Assembly (NCBI RefSeq): GCF_001194135.2
Contig: NC_068991.1
Coordinates: 61,710,954 to 61,744,427 of the forward strand
Direction: 5' to 3'
Source: Octopus bimaculoides
Taxonomy: Eukaryota
DNA: 33,474 bases
Made by a program: the position numbers and the translations under genes. Below the pieces are notes generated by a model. That model was not told where the DNA came from. It did not search any database and saw nothing but the letters and a program-made list of their open reading frames with translations. Shown one piece after another: positions 193 through 32,650 of this stretch. Positions within the stretch are counted from its first letter, which is position 1; every line of letters starts with the position of its first letter.

Positions 193-276
193 GTGACTAG
201 GTGGACGTGACTAGGTGGATGTGACTAGATGGATGTGACTAGGTGGATGTGACTAGGTGGATGTGACTAGGTGGAT
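193..276. repeat. Minisatellite: 6 x 14-bp GTGACTAGGTGGAT
   Basis: Units start at 193, 207, 221, 235, 249, 263; only two substitutions in total. Confidence 0.97.
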
Positions 277-305: not shown

Positions 306-1533
306 GAGTTCATAACTACTGGGGTCTGGAACTGTTGTGGGAAAAAATTTCGCCTCCAGTACCACCACAACCATGAACACAACCACCACCACAACCACTA
401 CCACAGCCACTACAACCACCACCACAATCAGTTCAACAACGCTACTACCACATCCATTACAACAGTTATTAATGATGACTACTACCACAATGGCCACTAC
501 AATGGTGACCACCACCACCACCACCACCATCACAATCAACACTTCTGCCACTACCACCACCACCACCACCACCACCACCGCTACTACCACCACCCTCACC
601 ACCACCACAGCCACCNNNNNNNNNNNNNNNNNNNNNNNNNNNNNNNNNNNNNNNNNNNNNNNNNNNNNNNNNNNNNNNNNNNNNNNNNNNNNNNNNNNNN
701 NNNNNNNNNNNNNNNNNNNNNNNNNNNNNNNNNNNNNNNNNNNNNNNNNNNNNNNNNNNNNNNNNNNNNNNNNNNNNNNNNNNNNNNNNNNNNNNNNNNN
801 NNNNNNNNNNNNNNNNNNNNNNNNNNNNNNNNNNNNNNNNNNNNNNNNNNNNNNNNNNNNNNNNNNNNNNNNNNNNNNNNNNNNNNNNNNNNNNNNNNNN
901 NNNNNNNNNNNNNNNNNNNNNNNNNNNNNNNNNNNNNNNNNNNNNNNNNNNNNNNNNNNNNNNNNNNNNNNNNNNNNNNNNNNNNNNNNNNNNNNNNNNN
1001 NNNNNNNNNNNNNNNNNNNNNNNNNNNNNNNNNNNNNNNNNNNNNNNNNNNNNNNNNNNNNNNNNNNNNNNNNNNNNNNNNNNNNNNNNNNNNNNNNNNN
1101 NNNNNNNNNNNNNNNNNNNNNNNNNNNNNNNNNNNNNNNNNNNNNNNNNNNNNNNNNNNNNNNNNNNNNNNNNNNNNNNNNNNNNNNNNNNNNNNNNNNN
1201 NNNNNNNNNNNNNNNNNNNNNNNNNNNNNNNNNNNNNNNNNNNNNNNNNNNNNNNNNNNNNNNNNNNNNNNNNNNNNNNNNNNNNNNNNNNNNNNNNNNN
1301 NNNNNNNNNNNNNNNNNNNNNNNNNNNNNNNNNNNNNNNNNNNNNNNNNNNNNNNNNNNNNNNNNNNNNNNNNNNNNNNNNNNNNNNNNNNNNNNNNNNN
1401 NNNNNNNNNNNNNNNNNNNNNNNNNNNNNNNNNNNNNNNNNNNNNNNNNNNNNNNNNNNNNNNNNNNNNNNNNNNNNNNNNNNNNNNNNNNNNNNNNNNN
1501 NNNNNNNNNNNNNNNNNNNNNNNNNNNNNNNNN

Positions 1534-2110
1534 AAGGGGTTAATAACTTCCTTGAAGGTTCCAAGAAGGAGATAAATATTTCCTGGAAAGTTCCGAGGGG
1601 GTTTATTACTTCCTGGAAAGCTCCGGGGAGCAATTACTTCTTGGAAAGTTCCGAGGAGGGAGAGGAGAGGGGTGAATTACTAGCTGGAAAGTTCCAAGAG
1701 GATTAATTACTTCCTGGGAAGTTCCAAGGAGGGGAGGATGTGGAGGAATTACTTCCTGGAAAGTTCCGAGGGGAAGGGGAGGAATTACTTCCTGGAAACT
1801 TCAAAGGGGGTTAATTACTTCCTGGAAAGTTCCGAGGAGGGGAGGGGTGGGTGGAATTATTTCATAGAAAGTTTCGAGGGGGATTAATTACTTGCTGGAA
1901 GGTTGCGAGCACAGGTGCATGAAGGGGAGGAATTACTTTCTGGAAAGTTCCGAGGATGGGGAGGTGAGGAATTACTTCCTGGAAAGTTCCAATGGGGATT
2001 AATTACTTCCCGGAAAGTTCCGAGGAGCGTGAGGAAGGGGAGGAATTACTTCCTGGAAAGTTCCGAGGTGGGGATGTAAGTACTTCTGGAAAGTTCTGAG
2101 GAGCTGATTA
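1534..2110. repeat. Complex minisatellite: 16 copies of ~21-bp core AATTACTTCCTGGAAAGTTCC separated by G/A-rich spacers; left end hidden in gap
   Basis: GGAAAGTTCC-equivalent starts at 1553, 1585, 1615, 1643, 1686, 1716, 1758, 1794, 1824, 1866, 1897, 1942, 1981, 2012, 2055, 2088. Confidence 0.95.
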
Positions 2111-2129
2111 ATTACATCGTATGTATGTA

Positions 2130-2409
2130 TACATAATCTGATAAATAAGTATCCAGACTGTTGCCATAGTAACGAGTCTAAATCACACAAAGTGAAGCTA
2201 CTTAGCAGAGATTGACCTTAAACTCTGCTGTGTATGCACACTAAGTTTTAAAGTTCTAGCTCACTTTTGCTGTTTACAGCAGTGCTTGGAAGGAAGGTGA
2301 GTAGCGTGTGATCGTCGGATTGACCATGACACAAAAAGTTGAGCAGAGAATCTGTATCAAATTTTGCCAAAAGCTTGACGATACTTGCTCAGAAGCCTAT
2401 GCAAAGTTT
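2130..2409 (+). mobile_element. Mariner (Tc1/mariner) 5' end with start of transposase
   Basis: TA followed by a TIR-like start; ATG at 2326 reads MTQKVEQRICIKFCQKLDDTCSEAYAK, the typical mariner N-terminal EQRxxIKFC HTH motif. Confidence 0.85.
2160..2173. promoter_or_regulatory. RFX X-box motif GTTGCCATAGTAAC inside the mariner terminus
   Basis: 14-bp match to the X-box consensus GTYNCYATRGYAAC. Confidence 0.4.
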
Positions 2410-2608
2410 TCTAAAAGTTTTCATTGTTCTCAAGACAATCAAAGAGATCTTGTGCAACTGAAACCCAAGTTTCTTTTTGGTTAGCTGGAAGCAATTTTGG
2501 CAAAAACTTGGCAGACACATGTCACATACCCAAATCTTCAGTGATAATGGACTGAACTGAACCATAACTAATCTGCACATCCTCTGATAACTCACAGATG
2601 GTGATTCA
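2400..2608 (-). mobile_element. Mariner transposase internal fragment (second HTH/linker), pseudogenised, inverted relative to the 5' piece
   Basis: Minus frame ITICELSEDVQISYGSVQSIITEDLGM*HVSAKFLPKLLPANQKETWVSVAQDLFDCLENNENF*KTL matches the mariner region just before the first catalytic D. Confidence 0.88.
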
Positions 2609-2973
2609 ACAACTATCTATGCATGTACTATCCTCTCCAATTATGAAGAAAAGAGAGGATGAAACCAATAAACTGTCCACAGTCTGTCTACCCTATGCGA
2701 AAGGCCTCTCCGAAAAGGTACAAAAGATATGCGGCCCATATGACATCAGGACAATATTCAAGAGTAATACAACACTTCATAAATATCTCCTTCGAGTAAA
2801 ACCACCAATAGAAGAGAATATGACCAAAAACTGTGTGTACTCCATCCCATGCAGCTGTGGTAGGTTATGCAAAGGCGTAACATGTCACCCCCTCAAAATA
2901 AGGGTAGACGAACATTGCAAAGCTGTGACATGAGGAGATATGGATAAATCGGGTATAGCTGATCATGTATGGA
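2609..2973 (+). mobile_element. Penelope-like retroelement fragment (RT C-terminus plus GIY-YIG endonuclease), decayed
   Basis: LPYAKGLSEKVQKIC..RTIFKSNTTLHKYL..KNCVYSIPCSCGRLCKGVTCHPLKIRVDEH..*GDMDKSGIADHVW fits the PLE motifs VYxIPCxCG.Y.GET.R.L..R..EH and S.IA.H. Confidence 0.88.
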
Positions 2974-3199: not shown

Positions 3200-3376
3200 T
3201 TTACTTTGATCCCAGTATATGACTGGTCCATTCTTATATCAACCCCAAAGTTCAACTGGTACTTTATTCTATTAACCCTGAAAGTATAAAAGGCACAGTT
3301 GAGCTCAGTGTAGTTTGAACTCAGAACTGTTGCTAAACATTTTTGTCCAATGTACTAATGATTCTGCCAGCTTGCT
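3200..3376 (-). mobile_element. tRNA-derived SINE family A, diverged copy
   Basis: Reverse complement carries gctggcagaatc-ttag...gagttcaaac head and aagtaccagt tail shared with ~10 other copies here. Confidence 0.7.
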
Positions 3377-3665
3377 ATCCTGAATAAAGCAAATATTCTG
3401 AATTAGGATATTTTATTTGAAAATATATAAAAAATACAAACATTATTATTATTTTTGCCTGGTTAGTATTTTTTATATTTTTTATTTATTAGATGATGTA
3501 CAATTTTCTTTTGTATATCTTCATTTATCTTTTATGTGCACTTTGTAATTAAATATTCAATTATACATCCTCTTTTTCTTTTGACGAAACTATATTATTA
3601 GACTACATTATTGTACTGGGCAGATAAACAAATTGAGTTTTAATAATGAAAAAATATCGTTTAAT

Positions 3666-4429: not shown

Positions 4430-4600
4430 TCATAAGAATCTTTAGCAATGCCGGACAAAATGCTTAGCAGCATTGCATCCATTTTTTACATTCTAAGTTC
4501 AAATTTCTCTGAAGTCAACTTTACCTTTCATCCTCTCAGCATCAATAAAATAATTACCAGGGAAGTACTGGGTTTAATATAATCAACAGCACCCCACTCA
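4430..4600 (+). mobile_element. SINE family A, diverged copy
   Basis: aatgcttagcag...ttctaagttcaaat...caactttacctttcatcct matches family A. Confidence 0.7.
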
Positions 4601-4614
4601 ATTATTATTATTAT

Positions 4615-4743
4615 TTTTTCTACTCTTGGCACAAGGCCCTAAATTTTGGGGAGGGGGCCAGTTGATTAGATCAACCCCAGTACACAACTGGTATTTAATT
4701 TATTGACCCCCAAAAGGATGACAGGCATAGTTGACCTTGGCGG
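4615..4743 (-). mobile_element. SINE family A, 3' half, inverted relative to 4430-4600
   Basis: Reverse complement: ccgccaaggtcaactatgcctgtcatcc...taccagttgtgtactggggttgatc. Confidence 0.7.
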
Positions 4744-4850: not shown

Positions 4851-5855
4851 GAGCCCTATAATCACGTGGACGACTGCTACTTTTGTAACCTAAATTTGAA
4901 GGGTATTAACCAGAAAAATCGACAAACACTTGTCTATCCTAATCTTGCCTCTGCTATTAGACCGGTTCCACACAGTGGAGAGCTTCCTGTTTCTGTCTTC
5001 AATGTCTTGCCACAGATAACTTTACCCTCAACCAAAGAAAAATCATCACCTGAAGATGACACTAGAGATCAAGACTTTTCAGTTGAGACTTTACCTCAGC
5101 TATTCTCTCAGGTAGAAGTGAATGATCTAGTTTGTGACTTGAACCTCCAAAAAATTGTGCAGAACTGTTGGTTTCCCAACTGAAAGAGAAGAATCTTCTA
5201 GAGAATGGTGTCCGTATAACCTTTTATCAGATTTGGTATGAAGAGTTCCTTTCTTTCTTCACAAAAGAGGAAGAGCTGGTTTACTACAGAGATGTCAGTG
5301 GGCTTCTTAAAGTTGGCATTGAGGAAAACAAACCAGAGGAATGGCGTCTTTTCATAGACAGCACTAAGCGTAGTTTAAAATGTGTATTGATGCTTAATGG
5401 AAATGTGTATGGCTCTGTCCCGCTCAGCCATTCAACAACTCTGAAGGAAAGATATGAAGAAATTAAGTTGGTTTTAGAGAAGATGCTGTATCACGATCGT
5501 AAATGGGTCATCTGTGTTGACTTAAAGATGGTGAATTTTCTCATGGGACAGTAATCTGGTTATACCAAATACCCATGCTCTCTTTGCATGTGGGGCAGTA
5601 GAGACCGAGTAAACCACTATGTTAAGAAAGATTGGCTGCCTTGAACAAATATGGCTCCATGTAGAGCTGCCAATATATTGGAAGAACCTTTAGTTGAGCG
5701 AGATAAAATCATTTTCTCCCTTTGCATATCAGACTTAGATTGGTCAAGCAATTCGTCAAAACTCTTGATGAAAATGGAGAGTGCTTCAAGTATATCTGCA
5801 GATTATTTCCAGACTTGACAATTGAAAAACTTAAAGCAGGGATTTTTGATGGACA
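4851..5855 (+). mobile_element. Fossil DDE DNA transposase, probably CMC superfamily (Chapaev/Chapaev3-like); frameshifts and stops
   Basis: EPYNHVDDCYFC (end of Chapa-type Zn finger), SAIRPVPHS, WRLFIDSTKRSLKCVL, WVICVDLKMVNFLMGQ*SGYTKYPC..C.W, LHIRLRLVKQFVK, EKLKAGIFDG; stops at 5552 and 5641. Superfamily label is from recall. Confidence 0.8.
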
Positions 5856-6160: not shown

Positions 6161-6638
6161 GTTCAGTAGTTTTATTTTTATAACGTGCTTTCACTTCACT
6201 ACCGAGCGCAGCTCTGTGCGCCTTGGGTATATGCTGTGGTTTGCTGTGATGCTCTTATGGTTACTGTATTGAAAGTGTTTTGCGTAGGATGTGTGCAGTG
6301 CCCAGTAGTGCAATTTTCTGTATGTTATATATATTTGTAAGTCCTGGTGTTTTTGTTATGTATTTGTCTGAATATTTTTTTATTATACCTAAGGCACCTA
6401 CTATGATAGGAATTGCTTCTGTTTTTAGATTCCACATTCGAGTTACCTCTATTTCCAGGTCTTTGTATTTTGAAAGTTTTTCCATTTCTTTTAGGGAAAC
6501 ATTGTCATCTGCTGGTATTGATACATCAATTAGAAAGCATTTTTTTTCTTCATGATCTTTGACAACTATATCTGGTCTATTTTCCTTAATTTCTCTATCT
6601 GTGTGTATTGGCATATCCCAGAGTATGGTTGCTTTCTC
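6161..6638 (-). mobile_element. R4/Dong-like non-LTR retrotransposon 3' end (restriction-like endonuclease domain plus 3' UTR), 5'-truncated
   Basis: EKATILWDMPIHTDREIKENRPDIVVKD..CFLIDVSIP..KEMEKLSKYKDL..IIVGALG..IQKIALLGTAHILRK is a PD-(D/E)xK RLE; open to stop at 6261; TAA tracts on both sides. Confidence 0.88.
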
Positions 6639-7074: not shown

Positions 7075-7387
7075 CACCACCACCACCACCACCACCACTA
7101 CCACATCACCATCACCATCACCATCACCATCATCATCATCATCATCGTCATCATCATCATGCCACCAAACTGGCAGAATCGTTAGCACACTGGGAAAAAT
7201 ACTTAGCAGTATTTGGTCCGTTTTTGCGTTCTCAGTTCAAACTCTGCCAAAGTTGACTTTGCCTTCCATCCTTGCAGGGCCAATTAAATAAAGTACCAGT
7301 TACGTACTGGAGTCGATGTAATCGACTTAATCCCTTCCCCAAATTTGAAGCCTTGTGCTTCCAGTAGAAAGGATTATTTTAATTTTT

Positions 7388-7555: not shown

Positions 7556-8147
7556 ATATTTTCGATTTCTTCTGTCCAAATATCAAATCATGATTTTTGT
7601 TGAAGGATTTGGTAATAAGCCTTGGTTGATTTGTCAAAGTTTGTTTTGCATTAAATGATTTTAAATATTTTCTCTCTAGACTCTAAGGGTTTTACTATAT
7701 ATATTTAATAAACTAATCGCCCTAGACCTTTTATTTAATTACTTTTGTTTTACACATCAGAAGTTAAATTCTTTTTATGCTTTAGAAGTATTTTGGCTAT
7801 TTTCCAAATAAAGAGAAAGCGTGAGTTCCAGAATAATAAAGTGCAAATGAATGATAAGGGTTTCGCTTAATTCAAATGAAAATCTGTAAGTGAAATTTTG
7901 TGGAACGATGCCAGGACCAAAAGATGATTTAGAAGTTAGAAATTGTTATCTGACCACTAATTAGTTCAGGTTCAAAAGAACAGCATTTCAGTTTTAGTAG
8001 AATAATATTTAATACTTGGAGATTTTTATCTAAAATTTAGATATAGTGTAATGTAATAAGAATTCAAATAAAAATATTTTGCACCAAATGACTGAGAAAG
8101 GAAAAGCTTCTGTTTGAATTAATATTTGCTTTATAATTAACAGAAAC

Positions 8148-8393
8148 TATGAGAGGGTGCTGGAAAGTTCCAAGGGTACTGAAAATTTTCTTAGGGTGCT
8201 GAAAAGTTCCTTTGTGAAAGGCTTGATTGGAAGCCCAACCTTCTGAGTTCTTTTACAGGGCTTAGAAAAACTGAAGGACTGCTGCAATAAGTGTTTGAAT
8301 CTGTGAGGGAAACATGTTGAATAAAATCATAATTAACCGATCCTCCTGTATTTTCTTTTACACAAAGTCAGGGATCCTGCAGCAACCCTCATA
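8148..8393 (+). mobile_element. Internally deleted mariner (MITE-like) inserted at TA
   Basis: Starts tatgagagggtgctggaaagttcc, ends gcagcaaccctcata (degenerate TIR); contains QGLEKLKDCCNKCLNL*GKHVE*, a mariner C-terminus; absent from the sibling tandem units. Confidence 0.75.
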
Positions 8394-8849
8394 ATATAAC
8401 AAATACAAGAACCAGTCCTTATTGTGGTGTGGTGCCCCTGTGGCCTCAATGAACCTGAGAGTTATGTCAGAGGAGCACAAACTCTAGGTAAGGCCTCCCA
8501 TGCTAAACTCATCAAAGGAAAGAGGCCAGATGAATATCGTGACCACAACATGGGCTACTCCTTGTTACAGTATGGATGTTTGTGTACCTCAATAACCCTG
8601 AAAGCAATGCAGGTATAGTATAAGCTCCCACCTGGTAGGTCTTCCTATGCTGGACAGGTCAAAGGATAGAAATCAGACTAATATTGACCAATTCCTCCCA
8701 GAGGTAAAAATGGGGTTGTACAGAGCCAGCACCTCTATTTAGCAAGGAACAAAGGTACAGAAATATAAATGACAATTTAAAATGTTCAAAGTCTGGGAGA
8801 GGAAAGACAGTCCAGAGAAAGCAAAGAAATATACACATTTAACCTAATG

Positions 8850-31535: not shown

Positions 31536-32421
31536 GCACTATTTTAAAGCCTAGCCAGGCTCATGGGCTCAGTTTCCTGGTTTCAATGGCGTACGTTTTA
31601 CCCCAGCTGGATGGGACNNNNNNNNNNNNNNNNNNNNNNNNNNNNNNNNNNNNNNNNNNNNNNNNNNNNNNNNNNNNNNNNNNNNNNNNNNNNNNNNNNN
31701 NNNNNNNNNNNNNNNNNNNNNNNNNNNNNNNNNNNNNNNNNNNNNNNNNNNNNNNNNNNNNNNNNNNNNNNNNNNNNNNNNNNNNNNNNNNNNNNNNNNN
31801 NNNNNNNNNNNNNNNNNNNNNNNNNNNNNNNNNNNNNNNNNNNNNNNNNNNNNNNNNNNNNNNNNNNNNNNNNNNNNNNNNNNNNNNNNNNNNNNNNNNN
31901 NNNNNNNNNNNNNNNNNNNNNNNNNNNNNNNNNNNNNNNNNNNNNNNNNNNNNNNNNNNNNNNNNNNNNNNNNNNNNNNNNNNNNNNNNNNNNNNNNNNN
32001 NNNNNNNNNNNNNNNNNNNNNNNNNNNNNNNNNNNNNNNNNNNNNNNNNNNNNNNNNNNNNNNNNNNNNNNNNNNNNNNNNNNNNNNNNNNNNNNNNNNN
32101 NNNNNNNNNNNNNNNNNNNNNNNNNNNNNNNNNNNNNNNNNNNNNNNNNNNNNNNNNNNNNNNNNNNNNNNNNNNNNNNNNNNNNNNNNNNNNNNNNNNN
32201 NNNNNNNNNNNNNNNNNNNNNNNNNNNNNNNNNNNNNNNNNNNNNNNNNNNNNNNNNNNNNNNNNNNNNNNNNNNNNNNNNNNNNNNNNNNNNNNNNNNN
32301 NNNNNNNNNNNNNNNNNNNNNNNNNNNNNNNNNNNNNNNNNNNNNNNNNNNNNNNNNNNNNNNNNNNNNNNNNNNNNNNNNNNNNNNNNNNNNNNNNNNN
32401 NNNNNNNNNNNNNNNNNNNNN

Positions 32422-32650
32422 GTGTGTTTTTGTGTGCACGTGTGTGTTTGTGTGCTTGTGTATGTGTGTGTGTTTGTGTGTGTGTTTGTGTGTGGATGTG
32501 TGTGTGTGTGCATGTGTGTGTGTGTGTGTGTGTTTTTGTGTGCACGTGTGTGTTTGTGTGCTTGTGTATGTGTGTGTGTTTGTGTGTGTGTTTGTGTGTG
32601 GATGTGTGTGTGTGTGCATGTGTGTGTGTGTGTGTGTGTCTTTGTGTGTT
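32422..32650. repeat. (GT)-rich compound microsatellite with a ~106-bp duplicated block
   Basis: tgcacg anchor at 32435 and 32541, followed by near-identical sequence. Confidence 0.9.

What the first reader, a model, noticed from the sequence alone, without database searches (positions are those of the whole stretch)
1534..2110. Repeat-spacer array whose core stacks STAT, ETS and Rel-type motifs, with a ~180-190 bp higher-order period
Seen: 16 copies of AATTACTTCCTGGAAAGTTCC. Centre-to-centre distances are 32,30,28,43,30,42,36,30,42,31,45,39,31,43,33. Short spacers (GAGGGGG(A)TT) and long spacers (GAGGAGGGGAGG..GAGG) follow S-L-L-S-L twice, giving 5-unit blocks of 180 bp (1686-1866) and 189 bp (1866-2055). 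The core is conserved while the spacers vary. Established: TTCCTGGAA is a canonical STAT GAS site, CAGGAAGT (minus strand) is the ETS consensus, and GGAAAGTTCC is one change from a kB site and also reads nGAAnnTTCn (two HSE units). Inference: this could be a homotypic immune/stress super-site or a TF sink at nucleosome-scale spacing; the GGGG-rich spacers could form G-quadruplexes. It could equally be a neutral minisatellite or a TE subterminal array.
Basis: partly seen in the sequence, partly recalled or inferred. Interest (0 to 1): 0.72.

Follow-up and report, generated by a model that had tools for sequence, protein, structure and literature searches.

The report
Ordinary minisatellite beside a mariner transposon
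A 580-bp run of 16 imperfect 28-45-bp repeats, in a transposon-rich and gap-ridden stretch of an animal-type draft genome, is best read as an ordinary non-coding minisatellite; it does spell out immune transcription-factor motifs, but nothing measurable sets it apart from neutral repeat DNA.

Summary
The array is real. None is expected by chance. The array starts at the edge of a 918-N assembly gap, so its true length and left flank are unknown.

The "180-190 bp higher-order period" is two blocks only. They are 79% identical, no better than the best 2-unit (84%) and 3-unit (82%) blocks. Autocorrelation peaks at 108, 31 and 73 nt. TRF reports periods of 28-115, not 180-190.

The core is not clearly more constrained than the spacer. 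Spacers differ mainly in length, as expected from polypurine slippage. The most variable site is the single CpG at the core/spacer junction. The motif strings are present but overlap on one TTCC/GGAA/TTCC palindrome, and motif positions are no better kept than AATTAC. No canonical G4 motif is present.

A mariner-like element starts about 10 nt after the array. Its relatives elsewhere lack the array. A two-unit relative lies at 17258-17345 on the minus strand, so the unit is at least locally dispersed.

Verdict: a neutral minisatellite, possibly seeded by a transposon. Low interest.

The parts
1534..2115 (+). Minisatellite array. 16 units of 28-45 nt (core starts 1542, 1574, 1604, 1632, 1675, 1705, 1747, 1783, 1813, 1855, 1886, 1931, 1970, 2001, 2044, 2077) plus a truncated 17th unit (AATTAC, 2110-2115). 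Each unit is a 21-nt core (AATTACTTCCTGGAAAGTTCC) followed by a G/A-rich spacer of 7-24 nt. Short spacers end in (A)TT and long spacers end in GAGG.
   Evidence: The + strand is 62% purine. GC skew is +0.44 over 1001-2000. Every frame has stops.
616..1533 (.). Assembly gap of 918 N that cuts off the left end of the array. Imperfect (ACC)n lies on its far side (361-615).
2126..2408 (+). 5' end (terminal repeat region, leader and first ~28 codons) of a mariner-like transposon. It is not part of the array and begins about 10 nt after the truncated 17th unit.
   Evidence: Its translation hits proteins carrying Pfam PF17906 (HTH_48), one of them named SETMAR by its source, with E down to 9e-25. It aligns at DNA level (74-86% identity) with contigs L008, L009, L010 and L011. 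The upstream flanks of L008 and L011 are unrelated to each other and hold no array unit.
2406..2610 (-). The next piece of the same mariner-like element. It is inverted relative to the external copies, and about 170 nt are missing between the two pieces.
   Evidence: L008 702-906, L009/L010 312-522 and L011 710-913 all map to the window in reverse. Translation.
17258..17345 (-). Second locus of the same repeat type, with two degenerate units: GGATTAATTGTAAAAATTCC-AGGAGGGGAAGGAAGG-ACTTCCTGGAAAAGTCC-AAGGGTGGGAGGAGGG. Its flanks are different from those of the main array. It lies about 140 nt from a SINE-like repeat.
   Evidence: BLAST hits. Sequence. nhmmer E = 1.6e-3 with the unit model and 1e-3 with the dimer model. 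No hit this good in 200 locally shuffled windows. Alignment A2. The flanks are not homologous.
8154..8210 (+). Mini-array of 3 x 20 nt (AGGGTGCTGGAAAGTTCCA...) that shares CTGGAAAGTTCCAAGGG with the array units. It sits in the internal part of another repeated, transposon-like element.
   Evidence: TRF.. nhmmer E = 9e-4, with no such score in 200 shuffles. Element structure. The similarity covers only about 19 nt, so common origin is not shown.

Best explanation
This is a non-coding, purine-rich minisatellite in an intergenic stretch full of transposon debris, in a eukaryotic (animal-type) draft assembly. It most likely has no sequence-specific function.

The unit is a 21-nt core followed by a polypurine (GAGG/GGGA-like) spacer. 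The array grew by repeated local duplication of one-, two- and three-unit blocks, through replication slippage or unequal exchange. The low-complexity spacers changed length by slippage, and point mutations accumulated everywhere.

The STAT-, ETS- and Rel-like strings are a by-product of one short TTCC/GGAA/TTCC inverted-repeat arrangement that was copied along with the unit. A mariner-like transposon later landed, or already lay, about 10 nt beyond the array's right end.

Shown: the anatomy, the lack of an ORF, the block duplications, the absence of extra constraint on the motifs, and the independence from the neighbouring mariner-like element. Inferred: the growth mechanism and the neutrality. 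The seed of the unit may have come from a dispersed or transposon sequence, because two more short loci in the same 33 kb share the motif.
For: - Tandem anatomy and exact spacings.
- Nested periodicities of 28-31, 42-43, 73-74, 108 and 115 nt at 80-83% identity: (families D3, D6).
- Stops in all six frames. No protein relatives for either strand's translations.
- Core substitutions (22 in 315 positions, 11 transitions and 11 transversions) are spread over all positions.
- Core versus spacer mismatches between the two 5-unit blocks are 12/103 against 17/75, Fisher p = 0.064, with gaps 2 against 7.
- Among the five typical short units the core differs by 18% and the spacer by 16.5% (11% without the CpG site). 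Among the long units the figures are 9% and 17%.
- The single CpG of the unit (TTCC|GAGG) has changed to CA in 5 units and to TG in one more (unit 2077). The window is CpG-depleted (observed/expected 0.34).
- No unusual single-strand folding (z = -0.7 and -0.4). No Rfam family.
- The surroundings are transposon debris and simple repeats: mariner-like pieces, SINE-like copies, microsatellites and 11 gaps.
- Transposons are a documented source of minisatellites (23% of human minisatellites/satellites): PMC3389668.
Against: - Neutrality is inferred from a single copy in a single genome. No orthologous locus, population data or chromatin data could be examined.
- In the long units the core is about twice as well kept as the spacer, and the block comparison leans the same way (p = 0.064). 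Mild constraint on the core cannot be excluded.
- The left flank is missing, so membership of a larger element is not excluded.
- Two further loci with the motif in 33 kb show the unit is not unique to this locus. A purely locus-specific origin does not explain that.
Confidence: 0.72

Rival explanations
1. The array is an integral internal or subterminal repeat region of a mobile element, either a DNA transposon with subterminal arrays or a composite retroelement with a VNTR-like region. It would be carried around the genome with that element.
For: - The same unit type occurs at a second locus 15 kb away in the opposite orientation.
- A 19-nt piece occurs in a 3 x 20-nt mini-array inside another repeated element.
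- The region is packed with transposons.
- The left flank is hidden in the gap.
Against: - The only element whose end touches the array, the mariner-like one at 2126, has relatives (L008, L011) with unrelated upstream flanks and no array units.
- The flanks of the array and of the 17258-17345 locus are not homologous: Smith-Waterman score 20 against a shuffle mean of 18.
- No terminal inverted repeat or transposon coding sequence is contiguous with the array.
- No related array was found through predicted proteins or in viral and metagenome contigs.
Confidence: 0.18
2. The array is a functional homotypic cluster of composite STAT/ETS/Rel (or HSF) binding sites. It would act as an inducible enhancer, or as a sink that titrates such factors.
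For: - The consensus core holds TTCCTGGAA, ACTTCCTG and GGAAAGTTCC.
- None of 200,000 shuffles of the core carries all three motif classes. That test is post hoc, because the motifs were chosen after reading the sequence.
- The core is somewhat better kept than the spacer in the long units.
Against: - The motifs overlap within 17 nt, so they cannot be bound independently.
- Only 7-12 of 16 units keep any given motif, and 1 of 16 fits the true kB consensus.
- Motif positions are no better conserved than the non-motif AATTAC.
- The spacing is irregular (28-45 nt), and the 180-190 nt period is not privileged.
- The junction CpG decays as in unprotected, methylated DNA.
- No recognised host gene (no ORF with a protein-family match) lies in the 33-kb window. 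The ORFs seen are simple-repeat or transposon-like, and the few ORFs scanned against Pfam gave no hit.
Confidence: 0.04
3. The array acts through DNA structure: G-quadruplexes or triplex DNA in the G/A-rich spacers, or hairpins at the TTCC/GGAA palindromes. The effect would be on replication or recombination.
For: - The + strand is 62% purine with G-runs.
- Five long spacers fit a weak two-tetrad pattern, G2+ with loops of 1-7 nt.
- Structures of this kind could help slippage.
Against: - There is no G3+ quadruplex motif with loops up to 12 nt on either strand.
- Single-strand folding energy is no better than shuffles.
- The palindromes have 4-bp stems with 1-2-nt loops, too small to form hairpins.
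Confidence: 0.04
4. The array is an assembly artefact, made of collapsed or mis-joined reads next to a gap.
For: - It abuts a 918-N gap.
- Elsewhere in the window, exact duplicates sit next to gaps (32422-32648).
Against: - The units differ from one another by 0-4 substitutions and in spacer length. An artefact of duplication would give identical copies.
- The array reads continuously into unique sequence on the right.
Confidence: 0.02

Closest known systems
Classical G-rich minisatellites (VNTR loci)
   Same: The units are tens of nt long and lie head to tail over at least 0.58 kb. One strand is purine/G-rich. Unit variants are interspersed and differ in length. The array lies in non-coding, repeat-rich DNA, and the units nearest each end include several of the more degenerate ones.
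   Different: Length polymorphism between individuals, which is the practical hallmark, could not be examined. The unit has an unusually clear two-part build, with a 21-nt mixed-sequence core and a polypurine spacer.
Transposon-derived tandem repeats (for example the VNTR region of composite SVA elements, or the TE-derived minisatellites catalogued in PMC3389668)
   Same: Unit length is similar at 30-50 nt. The array has transposon neighbours. The same unit recurs at a second locus, and part of it recurs inside another repeated element.
   Different: No parent element was identified. The adjacent mariner-like element does not carry the array in its other copies, and the flanks of the two loci are unrelated.
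Higher-order-repeat satellites (alpha-satellite type)
   Same: A 5-unit pattern (S-L-L-S-L) occurs twice. The two blocks are more alike (79%) than neighbouring units are (about 67%).
   Different: There are only two blocks, with no continuation. The 2- and 3-unit periodicities are as good or better. Units are 10 times shorter than in such satellites, and there is no evidence of megabase arrays.
Homotypic clusters of transcription-factor sites and tandemly repeated enhancers (for example the 72-75-bp enhancer repeats of some viral LTRs and promoters)
   Same: A short sequence with GAS-like, ETS-like and kB-like strings is repeated many times.
   Different: No target gene is evident. Motifs are not kept preferentially. 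Nothing was tested for binding, and copy number and spacing vary as in neutral repeats.
CRISPR repeat-spacer arrays (prompted by the finding's title)
   Same: A conserved repeat alternates with variable spacers.
   Different: The context is eukaryotic. The repeats are 21 nt. The spacers are only 7-24 nt, are all variants of one G/A-rich sequence rather than unique, and there are no cas genes.

Membership tests
Minisatellite (VNTR-type tandem repeat) | Head-to-tail copies of a 10-100-nt unit, far above chance | tested here: met
   16 units of 28-45 nt, with 0 matches expected by chance.
Minisatellite (VNTR-type tandem repeat) | Non-coding, with no reading frame maintained through the units | tested here: met
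   Unit lengths are not multiples of 3 and every frame has stops. Translations of either strand have no protein relatives.
Minisatellite (VNTR-type tandem repeat) | Interspersed unit variants, and growth by duplication of unit blocks | tested here: met
   There are two spacer classes. Block repeats of 73-74, 108 and 115 nt are 80-83% identical.
Minisatellite (VNTR-type tandem repeat) | Length polymorphism between individuals | not testable with these tools
   Only one assembly of the locus is available. Exact-protein look-ups for ORFs in and near the array found no other assembly.
Internal or subterminal array of a mobile element | The array is contiguous with the element's termini or coding part, and other copies of the element carry it | tested here: not met
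   This was tested for the adjacent mariner-like element. Its relatives L008 and L011 have unrelated upstream flanks and no units. The feature remains untestable for any element hidden in the gap 616-1533.
Internal or subterminal array of a mobile element | Many dispersed copies sharing the same flanks | tested here: inconclusive
   One further 2-unit locus lies in the window but has non-homologous flanks. The source genome could not be searched. Scans of viral and metagenome contigs gave only single chance matches.
Higher-order-repeat satellite | Multi-unit blocks repeated several times and more alike than any shorter period | tested here: not met
   Only two blocks exist, at 79% identity. 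The best 2-unit block gives 84% and the best 3-unit block 82%. TRF reports no 180-190 period. Autocorrelation is highest at 108.
Functional cluster of STAT/ETS/Rel sites | Motif matches present | tested here: met
   TTCN3GAA is kept in 12/16 units, the exact GAS string in 7, the ETS octamer in 7, GGAAAGTTCC in 9, and the true kB consensus in 1.
Functional cluster of STAT/ETS/Rel sites | Motif positions kept better than neighbouring positions or the spacer | tested here: not met
   Changes per position are 5/90 for AATTAC, 10/135 for TTCCTGGAA and 7/90 for AGTTCC. The core-versus-spacer difference is inconsistent.
Functional cluster of STAT/ETS/Rel sites | Factor binding, open chromatin, effect on a target gene | not testable with these tools
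   This needs experiments. No recognised host gene is evident in the window.
G-quadruplex-forming repeat | Four G3+ runs with short loops | tested here: not met
   There are 0 matches with loops up to 12 nt. Five two-tetrad (G2+) candidates exist.
CRISPR array | Repeats of 23-47 nt separated by unique spacers of similar length, in a prokaryotic context | tested here: not met
   The core is 21 nt. The spacers are 7-24 nt and all variants of one G/A-rich sequence. The window carries SINE-like and mariner-like repeats and microsatellites.

The most novel reading that the evidence does not exclude
The 21-nt core is a composite STAT/ETS/Rel-type response element, and its amplification created a homotypic enhancer or factor sink. 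This could be one member of a dispersed family, since a two-unit relative lies 15 kb away. Such a family would wire nearby genes to immune or stress signalling in this animal.
Probability: 0.04. Interest if true: 0.55.

Novelty: new member of a known kind. Interest (0 to 1): 0.1.

Why it matters
As it stands, it matters little. It is one more minisatellite in a repeat-rich draft genome.

It is useful mainly as a warning on two points. Short palindromic GGAA/TTCC cores will always read as STAT, ETS, Rel and HSF sites. Arrays next to assembly gaps are incomplete.

If the unit proved to be a dispersed family bound by such factors, it would be an example of repeat-driven regulatory wiring in an invertebrate-type genome. 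Nothing measured here points that way.

Tried and rejected
- **External copies by DNA.** An exact 19-mer scan found 0 matches in viral contigs. In metagenome contigs it found 7 single matches with no second unit nearby, which I take as chance.
- **External copies through predicted proteins.** Plus-strand frames, minus-strand frames and an exhaustive phmmer of a 64-aa stop-free stretch found no relatives. The two hits, P0008 and P0009, are unrelated repeat proteins that share 'PLGTF'-like words.
- **Independent assemblies of the locus.** Exact look-up of four window ORFs found none on record.
- **Literature.** Searches for the core sequence, for the SINE-like sequence and for the sample accessions gave no papers.
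- **Array as part of the neighbouring mariner-like element.** Rejected.
- **Array derived from the 8154-8210 mini-array.** Only about 19 nt are shared. My recollection that this stretch is a mariner C-terminal remnant was not confirmed by Pfam or PDB searches, so it stays open.
- **RNA gene or structured RNA.** No Rfam hit reached threshold. The best was E = 0.09, far below the gathering score. No tRNA was found.
- **Hairpin or cruciform potential.** Folding z-scores are -0.7 and -0.4.
- **Penelope-like reading of ORF 2598-2933.** This GIY-YIG idea came from memory and is unconfirmed.
- **Source organism.** It could not be identified with the tools. The SINE-like repeats, AT-rich microsatellites and 37.6% GC remind me of cephalopod assemblies, but that is memory only and untested.

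Full report
**1. What is there**

The 21-mer AATTACTTCCTGGAAAGTTCC occurs 14 times within 3 mismatches, all on the + strand between 1542 and 2064. No match is expected in shuffled sequence. A copy with 4 mismatches (1855) and one with a 1-nt deletion (2077) complete 16 units. Only four copies are exact.

Each unit is the core plus a G/A-rich spacer of 7-24 nt. Short spacers read GAGGGGG(A)TT and long ones GAGGAGGGGAGG...GAGG. After the 16th unit come GAGGAGCTGATT and a truncated 17th core (AATTAC, 2110-2115).

The array begins at the first base after a 918-N run (616-1533). Sixteen units is therefore a minimum, and the left flank is unknown. The + strand of the array is 62% purine. All six frames contain stops, and unit lengths are not multiples of three.

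**2. The higher-order period**

The spacer lengths from unit 1675 onward are 9, 21, 15, 9, 21 and then 10, 24, 18, 10, 22. S-L-L-S-L does occur twice, as blocks of 180 and 189 nt. The evidence stops there.

- The three units to the left are all short, so the pattern does not continue.
- The two blocks are 79% identical (83% without gap columns). The best 2-unit blocks reach 84% and the best 3-unit blocks 82%.
- Mean unit identity is 0.751 at lag 5, against 0.742 at lag 3 and 0.755 at lag 8. The permutation p of 0.017 is not corrected for the lags examined.
- TRF reports periods 28, 42, 73, 74, 108 and 115, and none near 180-190.
- Base-by-base autocorrelation is highest at 108 nt (0.416), then at 254, 223, 209 and 31 nt (0.39-0.40), with 73 nt at 0.385. 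Offsets 181 and 188 reach 0.366 and 0.370.

The simplest description is an array built from short-long dimers (about 73 nt) and short-long-long trimers (about 108-115 nt). One dimer plus one trimer adds up to 180-189 nt. Nothing points to a nucleosome-scale design.

**3. Core versus spacer**

The 15 full-length cores differ from their consensus at 22 of 315 positions (7%), with 11 transitions and 11 transversions. The changes are spread evenly: AATTAC 5/90, TTCCTGGAA 10/135, AGTTCC 7/90. The positions that make the transcription-factor motifs are no better kept than the positions that do not.

- Between the two 5-unit blocks, the core has 12 mismatches in 103 aligned positions and the spacer 17 in 75 (Fisher p = 0.064). 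Gap columns number 2 in the core and 7 in the spacer.
- Among the five typical short units, cores differ pairwise by 18% and spacers by 16.5%, or 11% once the CpG position is left out.
- Among the long units the figures are 9% for cores and 17% for spacers, with many gaps.

So 'core conserved, spacers vary' is mostly a statement about length. A GAGG/GGGA-type polypurine tract is prone to slippage, which would produce that pattern.

The single most variable site is the only CpG of the unit, at the core/spacer junction (TTCC|GAGG). It reads CA in five units and TG in one more (unit 2077). The window as a whole is strongly CpG-depleted (observed/expected 0.34, TpG+CpA 1.35). That is the signature of unprotected, methylation-prone DNA rather than of a guarded regulatory site. 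This last step is an inference.

**4. The motif reading**

The strings are there: TTCCTGGAA (GAS type), ACTTCCTG (the ETS octamer on the other strand) and GGAAAGTTCC (one change from GGGRNNYYCC; it also reads GAAnnTTC). They overlap within 17 nt because they are all readings of one arrangement, TTCC-T-GGAA-AG-TTCC. They are not three independent sites, and three factors could not occupy them at once (inference from the overlap).

Across the 16 units, 12 keep TTCN3GAA, 7 the exact GAS string, 7 the ETS octamer, 9 GGAAAGTTCC, and 1 fits the true kB consensus. A contiguous three-unit HSE occurs only in the last unit, which carries the deletion. No shuffle of the core carries all three motif classes (0 of 200,000). 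That test is post hoc, because the motif list was chosen after reading the sequence.

The G-quadruplex idea fails on the usual definition. No run of four G3+ tracts with loops up to 12 nt exists on either strand, and only five weak two-tetrad candidates are present. Single-strand folding of a three-unit stretch is no better than shuffles on either strand.

**5. Surroundings**

The window is a gap-rich (11 N runs), microsatellite-rich, 37.6% GC eukaryotic draft.

About 10 nt after the truncated 17th unit, a mariner-like transposon begins. The translation of 2326-2409 (+) together with 2410-2610 (-) hits proteins carrying Pfam PF17906 (HTH_48), one of them named SETMAR by its source, with E down to 9e-25. 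Four short public contigs that encode the closest hits (L008-L011) align to the window at DNA level, 74-86% identical, over 2126-2408 (+) and 2406-2610 (reversed).

The multiple alignment places the start of shared sequence at about 2126 (TGTATACATAATCTGATAAATAAGTATCCAGACTG). Upstream of that point L008, L011 and the window are unrelated to one another. A profile of the array unit finds nothing in those contigs. The array is therefore not part of this transposon. It lies next to an insertion.

Further right come an ORF that I recall as GIY-YIG/Penelope-like (unconfirmed) and a copy of a SINE-like repeat that is present at least ten times in the window. No recognised host gene is evident in the 33 kb.

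**6. Relatives of the unit**

Within the window, a profile of the unit finds two places outside the array.

- **17270-17296 on the minus strand** (E = 1.6e-3 for one unit, 1e-3 for a dimer model). This is a clear relative. Over 17258-17345 it reads GGATTAATT-(degenerate core)-AGGAGGGGAAGGAAGG-ACTTCCTGGAAAAGTCC-AAGGGTGGGAGGAGGG, that is two units with junction, core and spacer. Its flanks are not homologous to those of the array.
- **8158-8176 on the plus strand** (E = 9e-4). This lies in a 3 x 20-nt mini-array inside another repeated, transposon-like element. It shares only about 19 nt (CTGGAAAGTTCCAAGGG), so common origin is not shown.

In 200 locally shuffled windows, no hit reaches the scores of either place.

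Outside the window nothing was found.

- The 19-mer has no match in viral contigs and only seven isolated single matches in metagenome contigs.
- Translations of both strands have no relatives among predicted proteins.
- An exhaustive search found only two unrelated repeat proteins.
- No other assembly of the locus is on record.
- No paper holds the sequence.

The source genome itself could not be searched, so the genome-wide copy number, which is the key number, remains unknown.

**7. Explanation**

The best-supported reading is an ordinary minisatellite (confidence about 0.7). A short sequence with a slippage-prone polypurine tail was amplified locally by slippage or unequal exchange of one- to three-unit blocks, and it is now decaying by point mutation, fastest at its CpG. 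The transcription-factor look is a by-product of the amplified palindrome.

Because the unit recurs nearby, the seed may well have come from a dispersed or transposon sequence. Transposons are known to account for about a quarter of human minisatellites and satellites (PMC3389668).

The main rival (about 0.18) is that the array is an integral part of a mobile element whose other end is hidden in the gap. The regulatory reading (about 0.04) and the structural reading (about 0.04) are not excluded, but none of the tests that could be run supports them. An assembly artefact is unlikely, because the units differ from one another.

**8. Comparison, novelty and score**

By unit size, strand asymmetry, variant interspersion and context, this fits the minisatellite class. 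Polymorphism is the only defining feature that could not be tested. It does not meet the tests for a higher-order-repeat satellite, a G4 repeat, a CRISPR-like array, or a subterminal array of the neighbouring transposon. It is a new member of a known kind.

Interest is 0.1. The most novel reading still open is a dispersed family of composite STAT/ETS/Rel elements. It has a probability of roughly 0.04 and would be moderately interesting if true.

Noticed in passing
window 2126-2610: The two pieces of the mariner-like element are in opposite orientations (2126-2408 +, 2406-2610 -). All four external relatives are collinear, and about 170 nt present between the two pieces in L008 are missing here. 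This is either a real inversion and deletion or a misassembly.
   Followed up: partly
window 17162-17251 and 17452-17541: These 90 nt are 100% identical, 290 nt apart, and the first copy starts right after the gap 16714-17161. It could be an unmerged contig overlap (assembly artefact) or a very young tandem duplication. The two array-like units lie between the two copies.
   Followed up: partly
window 8154-8210 within 7958-8536: A 3 x 20-nt mini-array (AGGGTGCTGGAAAGTTCCA) sits in the internal part of a repeated element. The 5' part of that element (7958-8149) recurs at 9047-9238 and 9657-9853. The segment 8150-8444 is absent from the 9047-9356 copy, as in a deletion derivative of a DNA transposon. 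My guess that it is a mariner C-terminal remnant was not confirmed.
   Followed up: partly
window 2598-2933 (+): This 111-aa ORF contains NCVYSIPCSCG...LKIRVDEH, which I recall as typical of the GIY-YIG endonuclease domain of Penelope-like retroelements. Pfam and PDB sequence searches gave no hit.
   Followed up: partly
window 3234-3387, 4435-4741, 7168-7336, 9978-10141, 12453-12625, 13494-13588, 14174-14537, 17487-17662, 24547-24725: A SINE-like dispersed repeat of about 170 nt is present at least ten times on both strands, at 67-84% identity. ARAGORN and Rfam do not call a tRNA in it.
   Followed up: partly
window 193-276: A separate 14-nt tandem repeat, GTGACTAGGTGGAT x 6 with 95% matches, lies on the far side of the gap from the array.
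   Followed up: no
window 26768-27365: A 248-nt tandem repeat of 2.4 copies with 77% matches. Its unit contains a stretch that looks like the reverse complement of a tRNA-derived SINE head (from memory).
   Followed up: no
window 32422-32648: A 106-nt period at 99% identity, 2.1 copies, inside a GT-rich tract that starts right after the gap 31618-32421. It is suspiciously perfect and may be an assembly effect.
   Followed up: no
whole window: CpG observed/expected is 0.34, TpG+CpA is 1.35 and GC is 37.6%. CpG depletion is therefore strong. There are 11 N runs, most of them flanked by microsatellites.
   Followed up: partly
window 4866-5554 (+) and 6261-6614 (-): ORFs of 105, 128 and 117 aa with no Pfam match, probably remnants of mobile elements. 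The 117-aa ORF resembles, from memory, the C-terminal region of uncharacterised retroelement proteins common in invertebrates.
   Followed up: no
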